This document shows, piece after piece, positions 20,670-24,486 of a stretch of 64,000 nucleotides of DNA; position 1 is the first letter of the stretch, and every line of letters starts with the position of its first letter. The DNA is taken from sequence record NC_047995.1; one strand, written 5' to 3'. The notes beneath the pieces are model-generated. The model was given only the letters and a program-made list of their open reading frames with translations, was not told the DNA's origin and ran no database searches. The position numbers and the translations under genes were made by a program.

Positions 20670-21092
20670 TTACTGTGCCCTCATAGCGAACGTGACAGAT
20701 TCTTTCGATTCGAGCTTAGGACAACGCCACGTGATAACACACACGTAGGTCTGCTCATATTGATCGCTCATGGTACACGCTGTCTGGACGTTGGTCACAT
20801 CATTAGTCAGACCGTTAGCTCTGTCTTCGAGAGCAAGGCGCATGTACGTTGCAATCCATTCGGCAGTTGTCTGGTCGAAAGGCTCAAACAAATATTTATA
20901 CACATCAGCACCGAAGGACTCTCGCCACTTGCGCGTTCTCTTACGGGTACCGATGACCATCAGAATTTTCTGGACGATGCTGTCCATGTTCTGCACGTTA
21001 TCTCGTGGCTCAAGTTGAATCCACGCATTGATATCACAATAGATTCGCTCGCTGATAGGAACGTCTATTAATCTGATTCCGATTCCTGCCAT
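20670..21092 (-). CDS. Baseplate wedge protein, gp25/GpW-like (140 aa)
   Basis: SIVQKILMVIGTRKRTRKWRESFGADVYKYLFEP is typical of the gp25 family. Confidence 0.8.
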   Translation of the reverse strand: MAGIGIRLIDVPISERIYCDINAWIQLEPRDNVQNMDSIVQKILMVIGTRKRTRKWRESFGADVYKYLFEPFDQTTAEWIATYMRLALEDRANGLTNDVTNVQTACTMSDQYEQTYVCVITWRCPKLESKESVTFAMRAQ

Positions 21093-21382
21093 TAGCCAAA
21101 TCTCACGTTAGAACTACCGTTAGATGCAGTGTCTCCGCAACTGTTACCATCACCCGCACGTTGGGCCGGTTTACCGTTGACACGCACACTCGAACTGGAA
21201 GTAGCTTTGCCTACGTGCGGTGGCTTCTTTGGCTTCCAGTGTGGCATATATGAGTCACCCTGTCTCACGCTTCCCTTACCGTTGATCATCACGTTAGCAG
21301 ACGCTTGCGCGGCGACAACAGGAAAGTAACCGCTATGGCCTGTAGATTGGTCTGCTCCTAGGCGAATAGCTTTCTGTCCCAT
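21092..21382 (-). CDS. PAAR-repeat spike-tip protein (gp5.4-like, 96 aa)
   Basis: AIRLGAD..GH, VMINGKGSVRQGD, VRVNGKPAQRAGD..CG..GSSNV. Confidence 0.9.
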   Translation of the reverse strand: MGQKAIRLGADQSTGHSGYFPVVAAQASANVMINGKGSVRQGDSYMPHWKPKKPPHVGKATSSSSVRVNGKPAQRAGDGNSCGDTASNGSSNVRFG

Positions 21383-21405
21383 GATTATTCTCCTCTGTTA
21401 GACAC

Positions 21406-21413
21406 AAATTAGC
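21406..21413 (-). promoter_or_regulatory. Putative late promoter GCTAATTT
   Basis: Between a terminator and the PAAR gene, 24 nt before its ATG. Confidence 0.65.
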
Positions 21414-21431
21414 TTGTTACGAGACAGAAAC

Positions 21432-21457
21432 AAAAACGGGCAGCCTAATGGCCACCC
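21432..21457 (-). terminator. Intrinsic terminator closing the long non-coding region
   Basis: GGGTGGCC-ATTA-GGCTGCCC followed by GTTTTT on the minus strand. Confidence 0.8.
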
Positions 21458-21493
21458 AGTTTCTGTACGCTTGGATTTTGTGTCGTCATTCCC

Positions 21494-21652
21494 TTACGCC
21501 CGATGCAAGTGCCTATCAGCTTTCGCTGTTAAGCCGGAATGAGTGTTCGAGAGTGAAGGTACACCTGGTACCGACAGAAGGTGACTCTCGGACCATGCAA
21601 GCAATAGACCAAGCATCGCTATTGCAAGCATCGACACTAAGAACAAAAGCAT
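21494..21652 (-). CDS. Putative 52-aa hydrophobic small protein inside the candidate RNA
   Basis: AAGGAG 7 nt before ATG; MLLFLVSMLAIAMLGLLLAW (20 hydrophobic residues), then a polar tail ending ..RHLHRA*. Confidence 0.45.
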   Translation of the reverse strand: MLLFLVSMLAIAMLGLLLAWSESHLLSVPGVPSLSNTHSGLTAKADRHLHRA

Positions 21653-21711
21653 GTTTCGCTCCTTGTGTCATACTTTAAAGGACTACGTTTGATCGACGGT
21701 TACTTTATTCT

Positions 21712-21740
21712 GCTCGTCGCCTAAACTCCACTTGAGTATC
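21712..21740 (-). repeat. Copy 2 of the motif GATACTCAAGTG-N6/7-GGCGACGAGC
   Basis: 22 identical nt shared with 22106-22133; enclosed by an ATTCTG/CAGAAT stem. Confidence 0.85.
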
Positions 21741-22105
21741 AGAATGTTTCTCTGTCTTTACCGCCTACGTTGCGGCAAGCCGCGCACGACACTCACACAT
21801 CAAGGACACTCGGCGGAAGGAGGAAGTTCCGATTGCCCTAACAGCGTAAGTGAAGCGAAGGAGGTCCCGTATCGGTGATCTGCAGGGGTTCACGCACTTT
21901 TAACATTCGCTTCTTTGTGCGTTAAACCTTCGTGGACCCGAATGCCCTGCTAATCATTCCACGAAGATATTGCACACCCTATTGTGAACGAGGGGGTCGA
22001 GCTATGGCATCACGTCAACAGCAGTGGACGGCGGACACACTCCATTGCAATCTGTTAAGGGCAGAATGCAACAGGCTGTGAACAGCTTTGGCCAAATGTA
22101 GAGTC

Positions 22106-22133
22106 GCTCGTCGCCCAACATCACTTGAGTATC
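22106..22133 (-). repeat. Copy 1 of the motif GATACTCAAGTG-N6/7-GGCGACGAGC
   Basis: 22 identical nt shared with 21712-21740; enclosed by an AATGTAGA/TCTACATT stem. Confidence 0.85.
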
Positions 22134-22725
22134 TCGTCTACATTCGTTTACTCCCTGAAAGCATCACTAGGCAGCTTACCTGTGATACCCATGAGGACCT
22201 GCGGATGTTTATCACTCTCAGACTCTTAGTTCCCTGCATGTGAAAACAACACGTTGAGTCGTCCGCTGGATGACGTGCTGTTTATTCTCAATCCGCTTAG
22301 GCAGCGAAAGGCACATATCAGATAATGATGGAACTGTCATGAAGGAATCCCTGGAGGTCATCGCTTCCCAATGCACACAGGGTGAAAGCCTATGCACATC
22401 AGGCAGCGTCTGCTGCGATACTGCTATCCCTATTAGACTGCCCACAGCGTTGAGTTTTCCGCTCCAACAGTCTACGTGCCTGGAAGGTATATGCCGTGCC
22501 AAGTATGTATCAGCATGGTTCCTGCTGGGCCTTGAGAGCGTCAGCGACAGAGCATATATTCATCACGTGGGTGCCGGGGTTGTCCTCACGATTACAGAGC
22601 GCAAACTCAAACCGGCTGGAGGCCTACACAAACCGCATGTAGGTTTCACATCAAGAGAAGCCCGCTATGAGTCCTCTCCCTTGAGACATATTGATATTAC
22701 TATCTGCAATTTTTATTTACAGATT

Positions 22726-24486
22726 TTAGAAGGCTTTTCGTTCCACATTCGAATAATAAGTTTCGTATGGGTCAGAGTACAGCTCAGGACCACGCTGCGC
22801 ACGAATCGTCACGTAACCAGTGTGTCGGTTGAATGCGATGATTTCGACAGTAGGCTGCTTAGGCTTGATGGTCGAATAGATTGGTGCGTCCATTGTCGGT
22901 TCGTCTGTCTGAATCTTATTTACAGATTTCAGAGCATCACCAGACAGCGTAGGCAGATTAAATCTGATCTCAGCGCGTTTCGTACCAAAGGCAATCTTGA
23001 TAACGCCTGCAGGCAGTTCGACACCGTTCTGCTTCATGTACGCGCCGATACGACGAGCAACGCCAGTCAACTGGTCACGAGTACGTGGGTCGAATGTACC
23101 TTCGAAGCTGATTGCTTCTGCTGGCTGACGCACCGACATGTGCAGGCCTGTGTTGAAATAACCTTCGGCCAGAAGTCGCGTCACTTCCTTCACGATTTCT
23201 TTCGTGTTGGATTTGATAGCCGCAATCTTCAACTCAGGCACGTCAACCTTAACAGGGTCACGCATCTCAGTCTGGTTGTCCATGTAACCGAGGGATACGT
23301 GTTTCGCTTTGGTGTACGTGTGCTGGAGCACGCCAGTAGCACGAATCATGACAGAGCCAGACTTCGCTTGGTCGTACAGTTCATCGCTGGTGGTTGTGCT
23401 GAACAGGTAGTAGTCCGTAGGCACAGCCATGCGACCAACCGCTTCAACTGCTTTCGTCTGTACTTCTTTTACAGTCTTGCCGAAGACAACACGACTGCGA
23501 TTCGGCTGGGAAGCAGACACAGGGAAGAATGCGCCGTAAACAACCTGCACGTTCTTTTGAATCGGCTTGGAAGAGTTTACCTTGATGCCACCTTGCAGCG
23601 GAGGTAACTTAACGCCCACCAGCTTACCGCTGACGATAGCCTTGTTAGCGACAACAGGCTTGAGTGCACCAATCAGCTTCTGCACCTCAGCGCCGTCCAG
23701 AATCTTCTCCAGCGGAACAGCGAGGTTCTGCGGCAGATAGTGTTTCTTACGGAACGAGTAGATAACAGTGTCTTTCTTGATCTGCAACGGCGTAGCCATG
23801 TTGCGACCAATCTGACCTACAGGCTGGAAGGTGTTCTTCTTATCGTCAGCGATAGAGCCGAATGCTTTCGTGAACTCTGTCTGGCCGATGATGTTAGCAA
23901 CACGCTGGTGGCCACGAACGATGAAGATAATCTTCGGTTCGTCTTTCAGGCGCAGTTCGTAGCGGTCACGGTTCAAATAAACCATGCTGTACTTGTCGCC
24001 TTTCTCCAACACAAGGTCGTACTCGTCGTTGGCGTCATCGACAATAACTTTCTTACCTTGATAGGTTGCATATTGTCGGGCAGCAGAAGTAGAAGCAATC
24101 TCCAGCGCCTTGCCTGTGTTAGACAATGCAACAGCAAAGTCAGTCACGGCAGGCATCAGGTCAACAGAGGATGCAACCGCATAGCTGTTACGACGTTCAC
24201 CGAGATGCAAATGCACGGCAGATGATGCAGACATGAATACAGTGTTACCTGTGTCTTCATGTTTACCTGCAAAGTTCATGCCGCTAATGCGTTCGATGAT
24301 GTTCGCACTTAGAGCAGGAAACGCGATATCGTCACCAGCAGCGAAGTCAAAGATTTCGCCATGACGCCATGCGTATGCGACGTTGTTGGAGCTAAGTCCG
24401 ATAAACGCATCGCCGATCTGTTTAACAGTCATCGGCATAATACTCAGATCACGAATGACCGAGTTTTGCTTTTGAATAAGATTCAT
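22726..24486 (-). CDS. Hypothetical, probable internal head protein carrying the dispersed paralogous domain (586 aa)
   Basis: YATYQGKK..LEKGDKYSM..RYEL..DEPKIIFIV resembles domains in 37018, 45593 and 52904. Confidence 0.6.
   Translation of the reverse strand: MNLIQKQNSVIRDLSIMPMTVKQIGDAFIGLSSNNVAYAWRHGEIFDFAAGDDIAFPALSANIIERISGMNFAGKHEDTGNTVFMSASSAVHLHLGERRNSYAVASSVDLMPAVTDFAVALSNTGKALEIASTSAARQYATYQGKKVIVDDANDEYDLVLEKGDKYSMVYLNRDRYELRLKDEPKIIFIVRGHQRVANIIGQTEFTKAFGSIADDKKNTFQPVGQIGRNMATPLQIKKDTVIYSFRKKHYLPQNLAVPLEKILDGAEVQKLIGALKPVVANKAIVSGKLVGVKLPPLQGGIKVNSSKPIQKNVQVVYGAFFPVSASQPNRSRVVFGKTVKEVQTKAVEAVGRMAVPTDYYLFSTTTSDELYDQAKSGSVMIRATGVLQHTYTKAKHVSLGYMDNQTEMRDPVKVDVPELKIAAIKSNTKEIVKEVTRLLAEGYFNTGLHMSVRQPAEAISFEGTFDPRTRDQLTGVARRIGAYMKQNGVELPAGVIKIAFGTKRAEIRFNLPTLSGDALKSVNKIQTDEPTMDAPIYSTIKPKQPTVEIIAFNRHTGYVTIRAQRGPELYSDPYETYYSNVERKAF

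What the first reader, a model, noticed from the sequence alone, without database searches (positions are those of the whole stretch)
21707..22144. Duplicated RNA module GAUACUCAAGUG-N6/7-GGCGACGAGC presented on two different stems
Two copies about 394 nt apart share 22 identical nt, while the spacer and closing helices differ completely (ATTCTG/CAGAAT versus AATGTAGA/TCTACATT). A conserved core on unrelated stems suggests a protein-binding site or tertiary module rather than a recent duplication. CUC/GAG can pair next to an unpaired AUA.
Basis: seen in the sequence. Interest (0 to 1): 0.65.

Follow-up and report, generated by a model that had tools for sequence, protein, structure and literature searches.

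The report
Twin hairpin modules in phage RNA
Two copies of one small folded RNA element, kept almost unchanged on otherwise unrelated stems, sit inside an undescribed, highly structured 1.3-kb RNA of giant Erwinia phages and most likely act as paired docking sites for one common partner.

Summary
The window is Erwinia jumbo phage vB_EamM_Alexandra. The two hairpins (window 22095-22144 and 21707-21745, read on the minus strand, which is the gene strand) share 12+10 identical bases. They are the only two copies in the 266-kb genome.

Both copies sit at the same positions in about 17 related phages whose surrounding RNA is only 57-85% identical. The outer stems differ between phages but still pair. 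The CUC/GAG helix switches to CCC/GGG, CCA/UGG and CCU/AGG. The next pair switches between A.C, U-A and A-U. A nearly invariant U.G pair fits only the minus-strand transcript. The element is therefore an old, selected RNA module, not a DNA site or a recent duplication.

The hairpins are side branches of an unannotated transcription unit of about 1.28 kb:
- a recurrent promoter-like box;
- about 1.06 kb of helices (288 predicted pairs, 133 with compensatory change);
- a conserved 52-codon membrane-peptide ORF;
- an intrinsic terminator.

Rfam has no match, and the module occurs nowhere else in the viral or prokaryotic collections searched.

Its function is inferred only. The two copies are most likely equivalent docking sites for one partner, a protein slightly more likely than RNA. 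First-stage notes of this scan (s1-155863, s1-416042) had already flagged the large RNA and the ORF on this same DNA.

The parts
22095..22144 (-). HP-A, the distal (5') copy of the module. It has an outer stem of 8 bp and a C.C/G.A/A.G internal loop in Alexandra. Then come the invariant G-C pair, an AUA bulge, the CUC(A)/(C)GAG helix and the irregular apical part AGUG-AUGUUG-GGCGA. The core is 22106-22133.
   Evidence: 67.1 bits; covariation; alifold columns 683-731; core 97% column identity.
21707..21745 (-). HP-B, the proximal (3') copy. Its 6-bp outer stem lies directly on the G-C pair, and the core is the same with a 7-nt tip GAGUUUA. The core is 21712-21740. It ends 55 nt upstream of the start codon of the small ORF.
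   Evidence: 54.3 bits; columns 1101-1139; core 89% identity.
22144..22156 (-). 5' flank of HP-A: the 3' strand of the preceding helix followed by the A-rich linker (G)GAGUAAA(C/A)GA. It resembles the flank of HP-B.
21746..21765 (-). 5' flank of HP-B: GGCGG (3' strand of the domain-closing helix) followed by UAAAGA and a purine-rich linker.
   Evidence: pairs 963-966 with 1083-1086.
22693..22726 (-). An invariant 34-nt element that starts at the gp118 stop codon. It contains the promoter-like box AAUC-UGUAAAUA (TGTAAATA at 22714-22721) and is the presumed start of the transcription unit.
   Evidence: invariant in 17 of 18 sequences; 24 boxes in the genome against 8 expected; most lie 17-80 nt upstream of an SD plus start codon.
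21425..22713 (-). The presumed transcript of about 1.28 kb that carries both modules. It comprises about 1.06 kb of covarying helices, the small ORF and the terminator. It is unannotated in GenBank and RefSeq.
   Evidence: no feature annotated; no conserved long ORF; 288 pairs, 133 with compensatory change; no Rfam family.
21494..21652 (-). A 52-codon ORF with an AAGGAG ribosome-binding site and a hydrophobic N-terminus. It stays in frame at 47-53 codons in all 18 relatives.
   Evidence: homologous peptide in distant relatives directly behind the promoter-like box.
21425..21458 (-). Intrinsic terminator: a 9-bp G+C-rich stem that covaries, a tetraloop and a U-run.
   Evidence: pairs 1413-1421 with 1426-1434.

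Best explanation
The two hairpins are two anciently duplicated, orthologously conserved copies of one RNA structural module on the transcript of the window's minus strand.

Each copy is a peripheral hairpin that follows a domain-closing helix and an A-rich UAAA(A)GA linker. The two copies lie in two different sub-domains of a transcription unit of about 1.28 kb: a promoter-like box, about 1.06 kb of covarying helices, a 52-codon membrane-peptide ORF and a terminator.

The module is an irregular hairpin with these parts, from the base to the tip:
- a free-to-vary outer stem;
- an invariant G-C pair;
- a 3-nt A-W-A bulge;
- a 4-bp helix that covaries;
- an invariant purine-rich irregular region (A, then G-C and U.G pairs, with GA unpaired on the 3' side);
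- a variable 6-7-nt tip.

The paired positions keep only their pairing, while the unpaired positions keep their identity, and the hairpins are thermodynamically weak on their own. The module is therefore most likely read through its unpaired nucleotides. On this reading the two copies are equivalent docking sites that bind two copies, or a dimer, of one partner. A phage or host protein is somewhat more likely as that partner than another RNA element.

Binding would then either fix the two sub-domains relative to each other or couple the large RNA to its regulated 3' end. HP-B lies 55 nt upstream of the hairpin-occluded ribosome-binding site of the small ORF.

Shown here: sequence, uniqueness, conservation, covariation, strand and context. 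Inferred: transcription, the partner and the effect.
For: - Two exact copies exist and none is expected by chance. They are the only two in the genome.
- Both copies are present at orthologous positions in Alexandravirus phages, pEa_SNUABM_7 and metagenomic contigs. Their spacing is 350-393 nt.
- Covariation on 23 distinct hairpins: 76% of cells paired against 63% in shuffles (0 of 500 shuffles reach the observed value). 48 cells changed on both sides against 18.5 in shuffles. Sliding the 3' partners by one to three columns drops pairing to 26-46%.
- The core pairs show U-A/C-G/U.G at the second pair, C-G/A-U/U-A at the third and A.C/U-A/A-U at the fourth.
- RNAalifold independently predicts the same five core pairs.
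- The U.G pair (21 of 23, otherwise U-A) and the minus-strand-only model hits assign the strand.
- The HP-A core has 97% column identity, at the 99.9th percentile of 29-column windows. The outer stems have 64-72% against an RNA mean of 82%.
- Both copies are preceded by a helix 3' strand plus UAAA(A)GA.
- Context: 288 predicted pairs, 133 with compensatory change; a promoter-like box; a terminator; a conserved small ORF.
- The module is absent from every other context searched. This fits a dedicated partner that co-evolves with this RNA.
Against: - No partner was identified. The phage encodes no recognisable L7Ae or ProQ homologue; a RegA search also found nothing, but its control matched in no genome, so that result is uninformative.
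- No RNA-seq run holds this phage, so even transcription is inferred.
- The folding energies of the isolated hairpins are not better than shuffles (z -1.7 and -0.3).
- In Sasquatchvirus (Y3, pEp_SNUABM_52) the HP-A position carries an unrelated hairpin and HP-B is altered. Two copies are therefore not indispensable for the RNA as a whole.
- The inner two pairs (G-C, U.G/U-A) rest on a change on one side only.
- An alternative register exists for the A-type copies: GU pairing with AC next to the CUC/GAG helix.
- The family has about ten independent lineages only, so the statistics are limited.
Confidence: 0.45

Rival explanations
1. The modules are RNA-RNA tertiary or quaternary contact elements. 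Each would dock on another conserved part of the same RNA, or of a second copy of it, as kissing loops and A-minor contacts do in the ROOL, GOLLD and OLE assemblies. On this reading they are architectural and bind no protein.
For: - The modules are peripheral hairpins in a very large RNA rich in covariation.
- An A-rich bulge and A-rich 5' linkers are typical A-minor donors (established knowledge of RNA tertiary motifs).
- Exactly two further conserved ACUCAA(C) elements lie in loops of the 5' half (window 22447-22460 and 22252-22264). They are complementary to the UUGGG of most module tips.
- In pEa_SNUABM_7 and the JACCDR contig, a C-to-U change in the second element coincides with a G-to-A change in HP-B.
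- The weak stand-alone stability fits elements that are stabilised by packing.
Against: - The complementarity is not kept consistently. Alexandra's own HP-B tip (GAGUUUAGG) cannot pair with ACUCAA. The UCGGG variants in four phages give A.C mismatches without compensation. pEa_SNUABM_35 gives a C.A mismatch.
- Systematic scans for conserved complements found only invariant, wobble-rich matches that carry no covariation signal.
Confidence: 0.3
2. The modules are processing signals. An endoribonuclease would cut at both hairpins and release the segment of about 390 nt between them, or trim the leader from the small-ORF mRNA. The layout of 3-nt bulge, 4-bp helix and opposite-strand bulge loosely resembles a bulge-helix-bulge splice motif.
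For: Two identical signals lie in direct orientation at a conserved spacing of 350-393 nt. The bulge(3), helix(4), bulge(2+1) layout is seen.
Against: - The genome encodes no splicing endonuclease (PF01974) and no RtcB ligase (the controls matched in known genomes).
- The second bulge is a 1x2 internal loop, not a 3-nt bulge.
- The hairpins are too short and irregular for RNase III.
- No read data exist to show RNA ends.
Confidence: 0.07
3. The modules are two copies of a small-ligand or ion-binding aptamer. They would act as riboswitch-like tandem sensors that tune the folding of the large leader and translation of the small ORF.
For: Invariant unpaired nucleotides on variable stems are also the signature of aptamers. 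HP-B lies close to the occluded ribosome-binding site.
Against: No Rfam family matches even at E=10. The element is confined to one small phage lineage. The copies are 390 nt apart, not adjacent, and HP-A is far from any expression platform.
Confidence: 0.05
4. The repeat acts at DNA level, either as a double-stranded operator or partition-like site, or as single-stranded DNA hairpins for a nuclease or recombinase. On this reading the stems are incidental.
For: There are two copies of a bipartite 12+10-bp sequence with fixed spacing. The surrounding region lies at the head of the baseplate gene block.
Against: - Compensatory changes inside the 'site' (CUC/GAG to CCC/GGG, CCA/UGG and CCU/AGG) conserve pairing, not sequence.
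- The conserved U.G pair would be a C.A mismatch on the other strand.
- The whole 1.3 kb around it behaves as structured RNA with GNRA and UUCG tetraloops.
- No transposase, recombinase or HUH gene is adjacent.
Confidence: 0.03

Closest known systems
GOLLD and ROOL large ornate RNAs (phage- and prophage-borne; cryo-EM in PMC12286853)
   Same: They are very large, intricately structured, phage-associated non-coding RNAs of unknown function. They have many covarying helices and conserved peripheral loops, and those loops make higher-order contacts.
   Different: There is no sequence or structure homology: Rfam models give nothing. This RNA is longer (about 1.06 kb of structure plus an ORF). It lies at the head of the baseplate cluster of enterobacterial jumbo phages, with no tRNA genes in the 64-kb window. 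It carries a translated-looking small ORF and contains a duplicated module. Multimerisation is untested.
Phage leader-RNA recognition hairpins: lambda nutL/nutR boxB (N protein) and HK022 putL/putR (RNA polymerase)
   Same: Repeated small hairpins in phage transcripts whose conserved unpaired bases are read by one partner. They are placed between a promoter and a terminator that precedes a long late or delayed operon.
   Different: boxB is a 15-nt hairpin with a GNRA-like pentaloop, and put is two adjacent stem-loops of about 70 nt. Here the copies are 390 nt apart within one transcript, carry an A-W-A bulge and a 15-16-nt irregular apical part, and are embedded in a 1-kb fold. No N-like protein is known. 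Antitermination is only a conjecture, drawn from the layout of promoter-like boxes.
Coat-protein and repressor operator hairpins (MS2, PP7) and other bulge-plus-loop protein sites
   Same: The stem sequence is free while the bulged purine(s) and loop bases are fixed. Multiple copies bind multiple protein dimers.
   Different: Those operators have a single bulged A and 4-6-nt loops. The sequences and dimensions differ, and no related protein is encoded (no candidate found).
Kink-turn (L7Ae-type) motif
   Same: A 3-nt bulge sits between two helices. In HP-A of most phages, tandem G.A/A.G pairs lie next to the invariant G-C pair.
   Different: The order of elements is wrong. The G.A pairs lie 5' of the bulge on the bulged strand, and the helix 3' of the bulge is Watson-Crick (CUC/GAG). 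HP-B and the HP-A copies of pEa_SNUABM_7 and JACCDR lack the G.A pairs. There is no L7Ae gene.

Membership tests
Any curated RNA family (Rfam 15, 4227 models, including GOLLD, ROOL, HEARO, OLE, riboswitches and ribozymes) | Covariance-model score at or above the family's gathering threshold | tested here: not met
   0 matches in the whole window; at E up to 10 over 21350-22780, the only match is a 14-bit chance hit to an L31 leader on the other strand.
GOLLD/ROOL-type large ornate phage RNA (as a phenomenological kind) | More than 500 nt, no conserved long ORF, and dense covariation-supported secondary structure | tested here: met
   288 predicted pairs, 133 with compensatory change over about 1.3 kb; no conserved ORF in the first 1.06 kb.
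GOLLD/ROOL-type large ornate phage RNA (as a phenomenological kind) | Frequent neighbourhood of tRNA genes | tested here: not met
   no tRNA or tmRNA gene in the 64-kb window.
GOLLD/ROOL-type large ornate phage RNA (as a phenomenological kind) | Homo-oligomeric RNA-only assembly | not testable with these tools
   Needs cryo-EM, SEC-MALS or native gels of the transcript.
Kink-turn | On the bulged strand: C-stem, a 3-nt bulge, then tandem sheared G.A/A.G opening the NC-stem | tested here: not met
   the bulge is followed by the Watson-Crick CUC/GAG helix. G.A pairs occur only in some HP-A copies and on the wrong side.
Bulge-helix-bulge splice motif | Two 3-nt bulges on opposite strands separated by exactly 4 bp | tested here: inconclusive
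   a 3-nt bulge and a 4-bp helix are present. The second 'bulge' is a 1x2 internal loop.
Bulge-helix-bulge splice motif | A cognate splicing endonuclease (and ligase) is available | tested here: not met
   no PF01974 and no PF01139 in the phage genome, with the controls positive. The host was not searched.
lambda-type nut boxB | A short 5-bp stem closed by a GNRA-like pentaloop, preceded by boxA | tested here: not met
   the apical part is 15-16 nt with an internal bulge, and no boxA-like element was noted.
Intrinsic terminator or attenuator hairpin | A G+C-rich stem directly followed by a U-run | tested here: not met
   One search lists only the terminator at 21437-21458 on the minus strand. 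Neither module is followed by a U-run.
Iron-responsive-element-like hairpin | A six-membered CAGUGN loop five base pairs above a bulged C | tested here: not met
   CAAGUG is present, but inside a 15-16-nt irregular apical part. The bulge is A-W-A, 3-4 bp below.

The most novel reading that the evidence does not exclude
The twin modules are the anchoring points through which a giant phage leader RNA captures a partner, either RNA polymerase or a phage factor, or pairs with a second RNA copy. The RNA would then work as a put-like, RNA-based processive antitermination or assembly device of more than 1 kb. It would let transcription that starts at its own promoter-like box pass its own conserved terminator into the minus-strand baseplate and tail-fibre genes downstream. 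The stretch from genome 42 kb to 84.7 kb has no other strong box on the minus strand.
Probability: 0.1. Interest if true: 0.85.

Novelty: new variant of a known kind. Interest (0 to 1): 0.66.

Why it matters
Large structured RNAs of phages (GOLLD, ROOL) are among the least understood RNAs, and none has an assigned function.

This finding gives a new, unrelated example in cultivable jumbo phages of Erwinia amylovora and Dickeya. Those phages are used in biocontrol work and can be handled genetically. The example comes with a defined experimental handle: two 28-29-nt cores that are the most conserved part of the RNA and should mark where a partner binds. Pull-downs or loop mutations of these hairpins are the shortest route to the function of the whole 1.3-kb RNA.

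The comparison with distant relatives adds a second point of interest. In those phages the same promoter-like box sits directly in front of the small ORF. This suggests that a kilobase of structured RNA was inserted into, or grew inside, a 5' leader, which is an unusual evolutionary event.

If the partner turns out to be RNA polymerase, or the RNA itself, the module would define a new recognition motif.

Tried and rejected
1. Known families. Rfam at gathering and at E=10 thresholds gave nothing.

2. Wider duplication. Local alignment of the two halves found no significant similarity beyond the module and its UAAA(A)GA flank. The RNA is therefore not a tandem duplicate.

3. More copies.
- The covariance model R1 on the genome, on the RNA with filters off and on five distant relatives' whole records found none.
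- One weak module-like hairpin (15 bits) turned up in the distant contig L027 at 1583-1629.

4. Module elsewhere in nature.
- IMG/VR pattern scans found only this phage family plus four non-structured chance hits.
- GTDB genomes gave 42 hits, about the chance number, all at 21 bits or less by the model against 44-67 bits for true copies.

5. More homologues of the RNA.
- The metagenome scan added one contig, L055.
- A module-independent IMG/VR pattern gave 26 new loci, none confirmed by nhmmer; the only confirmed locus, L103, is the known phage Y3.
- Distant relatives keep gp118, the box, the small ORF and the terminator, but have no recognisable large RNA.

6. Tertiary partner. Single-column covariation was uninformative. 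Conserved complements were only invariant, wobble-rich segments. The ACUCAA/UUGGG kissing idea is not consistently supported.

7. Thermodynamics. The isolated hairpins do not fold better than shuffles.

8. Enzymes and partners in the phage genome. No splicing endonuclease, RtcB, L7Ae or ProQ was found. The RegA search is uninformative because its control matched in no genome.

9. Expression. No RNA run holds the sequence.

10. Coding explanation for the core conservation. ORFs overlapping HP-A differ in frame and start between relatives, and a 1-nt indel lies in the 3' stem.

11. Literature. No paper on a structured RNA in Alexandravirus was found.

Full report
**Identity and context.** The window is genome positions 62001-126000 of Erwinia phage vB_EamM_Alexandra (MH248138 / NC_047995, 266,532 bp, genus Alexandravirus). 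All genes around the finding lie on the minus strand. The two hairpins lie in an unannotated 1343-nt gap (21383-22725). On one side is gp118, a 586-aa protein with a KMPT-N domain (22726-24486). On the other is the PAAR spike-tip gene gp117 (21092-21382), which opens a baseplate and tail gene block. The gap is also unannotated in Dickeya phage AD1. Where it is annotated in other relatives, the short ORFs are inconsistent.

**The observation.** None is expected in shuffles. Each half alone is at chance frequency elsewhere. Pattern and covariance-model searches find no further copy in the genome or, with filters off, in the gap.

**Conservation and covariation.**
- BLAST finds the gap at 72-85% identity in 32 further Alexandravirus records. 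It is partly conserved in Sasquatchvirus Y3 and in pEp_SNUABM_52.
- I collected 24 loci through the PAAR protein, five more from GenBank and one metagenome contig.
- Both hairpins are present at orthologous positions in all Alexandravirus-like sequences, in pEa_SNUABM_7 and in the metagenome contig JACCDR. Their spacing is 350-393 nt.
- Across 23 distinct hairpins the outer stems are different sequences that still pair.
- The second pair of the inner helix is U-A (13), C-G (9) or U.G (1). The third is C-G (21), A-U (1) or U-A (1). The fourth is A.C (13), U-A (7) or A-U (3).
- Overall, 76% of cells are paired against 63% in shuffles (0 of 500 shuffles reach this). 48 cells changed on both sides against 18.5 in shuffles. 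Sliding the 3' partners by one to three columns drops pairing to 26-46%.
- RNAalifold, given only the alignment, predicts the same five core pairs.
- An inner U.G pair (21 of 23, U-A in the other two) would be a C.A mismatch on the opposite strand. The model hits are on the minus strand only, so the fold belongs to the gene-sense transcript.
- The HP-A core has 97% mean column identity, higher than 99.9% of all 29-column windows of the RNA. HP-B has 89%. The outer stems (64-72%) are below the RNA average of 82%.
Elsewhere HP-B reads GAAACCCUAGUG...GGCGAAGGGC, which differs from HP-A mostly by compensatory pairs.

**Anatomy of the module.** From outside to inside:
- a variable stem of 5-8 bp;
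- in most HP-A copies, an extra C.C/G.A/A.G internal loop, which is absent in HP-B, pEa_SNUABM_7 and JACCDR;
- an invariant G-C pair;
- a 3-nt bulge A-(U/A)-A;
- four pairs, C-G, Y-R, N-N' and W.H;
- an unpaired A on the 5' side;
- G-C and U.G pairs;
- an 8-9-nt tip that starts with G-A and ends with G-G around a variable centre (AUGUUG, AAGUUG, AAGUCG, AUCGUG, AUAGUG, GAGUUUA);
- an unpaired G-A on the 3' side.

Two points are uncertain. The inner two pairs rest on a one-sided change only. For the copies with A...C at the fourth pair, an alternative register (GU with AC) is possible.

Both copies are preceded by the 3' strand of a domain-closing helix and the linker UAAA(A)GA. The repeated unit is therefore about 60-65 nt. 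No further similarity exists between the two halves of the RNA.

**The surrounding RNA.** The gap is one transcription-unit-like block.
- At the gp118 stop codon lies a 34-nt element that is invariant in 17 of 18 sequences. It contains AAUC-UGUAAAUA.
- TGTAAATA occurs 24 times in the genome (8 expected), always in the local gene orientation. Most copies have the same AATC prefix and lie 17-80 nt upstream of a Shine-Dalgarno sequence and start codon. By analogy with the T4 late promoter TATAAATA, which I recall from knowledge and did not test, I read it as a phage promoter.
- About 1.06 kb follows without any conserved ORF. It has 288 predicted pairs, 133 of them with compensatory change, and GNRA and UUCG tetraloops.
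- Next comes a 52-codon ORF with an AAGGAG site and a hydrophobic N-terminus. It keeps its frame at 47-53 codons in all 18 sequences. Its ribosome-binding site is predicted to lie in a hairpin.
- A covarying intrinsic terminator closes the block.
- Rfam has no match, the window has no tRNA genes, and I found no paper that describes the RNA.
- In the consensus fold, HP-A is one arm of a three-way junction closed by GACC/GGUC. HP-B follows the helix that closes the next large domain.

**Distribution.**
- In Y3 and pEp_SNUABM_52 the RNA is present. The HP-A position carries an unrelated hairpin, and HP-B is altered: an AGA bulge, CUU/GAG, and then a regular 5-bp helix with an AGUUGG loop.
- More distant relatives, with PAAR at 68-75% identity, keep a gp118 homologue, the box, the small ORF and the terminator. 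In them a box sits about 50 nt in front of the small ORF, and no large RNA is recognisable. One of them has a single weak module-like hairpin elsewhere.
- The kilobase of structure, with its two modules, thus looks like an elaboration of the leader of an older small-ORF cassette.
- Outside this lineage the module does not occur. IMG/VR and GTDB pattern hits are at chance number and fail the structural model. Five whole distant phage records have none.

**Mechanism.** The paired positions conserve pairing only. The unpaired positions conserve identity. The stand-alone folding energy is unremarkable. This is the usual signature of a hairpin that is recognised through its bulge and loop by a specific partner. 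Two equivalent copies imply two equivalent contacts.

I could not decide between a protein and an RNA partner.
- For RNA: two further conserved ACUCAA loops in the 5' half are complementary to the UUGGG of most module tips, and one apparent double change supports this pairing. Against it, Alexandra's own HP-B tip, the UCGGG variants and pEa_SNUABM_35 break the complementarity. Systematic scans gave no covarying partner.
- For protein: the variable centre of the tip and the lineage-restricted distribution fit a dedicated co-evolving factor. However, no candidate RNA-binding family was found in the phage (the first uninformative).
- I therefore give a protein partner 0.45 and an RNA partner 0.30. 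Processing sites get 0.07; the bulge-helix-bulge-like layout has no endonuclease or ligase to go with it. Ligand aptamers get 0.05 and a DNA-level role 0.03.
- No RNA-seq data exist for this phage, so transcription itself is inferred from the box, the terminator, the strand-specific pairs and the covariation.

**A speculative wider reading.** The RNA's box and one 200 nt upstream of it are the last strong boxes on the minus strand before the baseplate and fibre genes. From genome 42 kb to 84.7 kb the minus strand has no box above 15 bits. Within the window the long ORFs from 10.8 to 21.4 kb are on the minus strand. If those genes depend on this start, polymerase must pass the RNA's own terminator, and the RNA could be a put-like antitermination leader. 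I rate this at about 0.1.

**Verdict.** The RNA-module reading is supported by independent compensatory changes. The duplication is ancient. The modules are the best-conserved parts of a new giant structured phage RNA. Their partner and effect remain to be found by experiment.

Noticed in passing
window 22693-22726 (-), and genome-wide: The promoter-like box (G/T)AAATC-TGTAAATA occurs 24 times in the genome against 8 expected. It always follows the local gene orientation and mostly lies 17-80 nt upstream of an SD plus start codon. It resembles the T4 late promoter TATAAATA. The copy at the head of the large RNA is embedded in a 34-nt element that is invariant across relatives and can itself fold as a hairpin.
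   Followed up: partly
window 21494-21652 (-); L024, L025, L027, L018 at about -560 to -400 before the PAAR gene: The unannotated 52-codon membrane-peptide ORF is kept in frame in all 18 relatives. In distant relatives a homologous peptide (ending ...HVRGMW) sits about 50 nt behind the same promoter-like box with no large RNA in between. The 1-kb structure therefore looks like an insertion or expansion inside an older leader. The 3' half of the ORF overlaps covarying hairpins with tetraloops.
   Followed up: partly
window 21855-21865 (-): A conserved segment ACCUCCUUCGC, predicted to be single-stranded, carries the anti-Shine-Dalgarno core CCUCCU. GCAGAUCACCGAU lies just upstream of it. It is complementary to the AAGGAG site of the small ORF about 200 nt downstream. 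It may be a long-range occluder or a decoy.
   Followed up: no
window 22447-22460 and 22252-22264 (-): Two further conserved ACUCAA(C) elements sit in loops of the 5' half. Together with the two modules this makes four ACUCAA copies in one RNA, against about 0.3 expected for a 6-mer in 1.3 kb.
   Followed up: partly
window 21390-21415 (-): A 26-nt segment between the terminator and the PAAR start codon (AAGCUAAUUUGUGYCUAACAGAGGAG) is nearly invariant. It is unique in the genome, so it is not a general promoter. It may be a translational operator or a processing site for the baseplate operon.
   Followed up: no
genome about 160,287 (-), 174,949 (-) and 187,204 (+), outside the window: Three further TGTAAATA boxes are followed by 700-1200 nt without an SD-preceded ORF of 50 codons or more. 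These could be other long leaders or non-coding RNAs in this phage.
   Followed up: no
L007, L012, L026 (AD1, pEa_SNUABM_3 and pEa_SNUABM_33), between terminator and PAAR; L024 and L025 at -131 to -3: Some relatives carry an extra ORF of about 40 codons between the terminator and the PAAR gene (in the distant relatives L024 and L025 it reads MTRL...KIP...). Alexandra lacks it.
   Followed up: no
window 22726-24486 (-): gp118 (586 aa, KMPT-N domain, PHROG 32352) always lies directly upstream of the RNA. It also occurs at 40-50% identity in relatives without a recognisable RNA, so it is not strictly linked to the RNA.
   Followed up: partly
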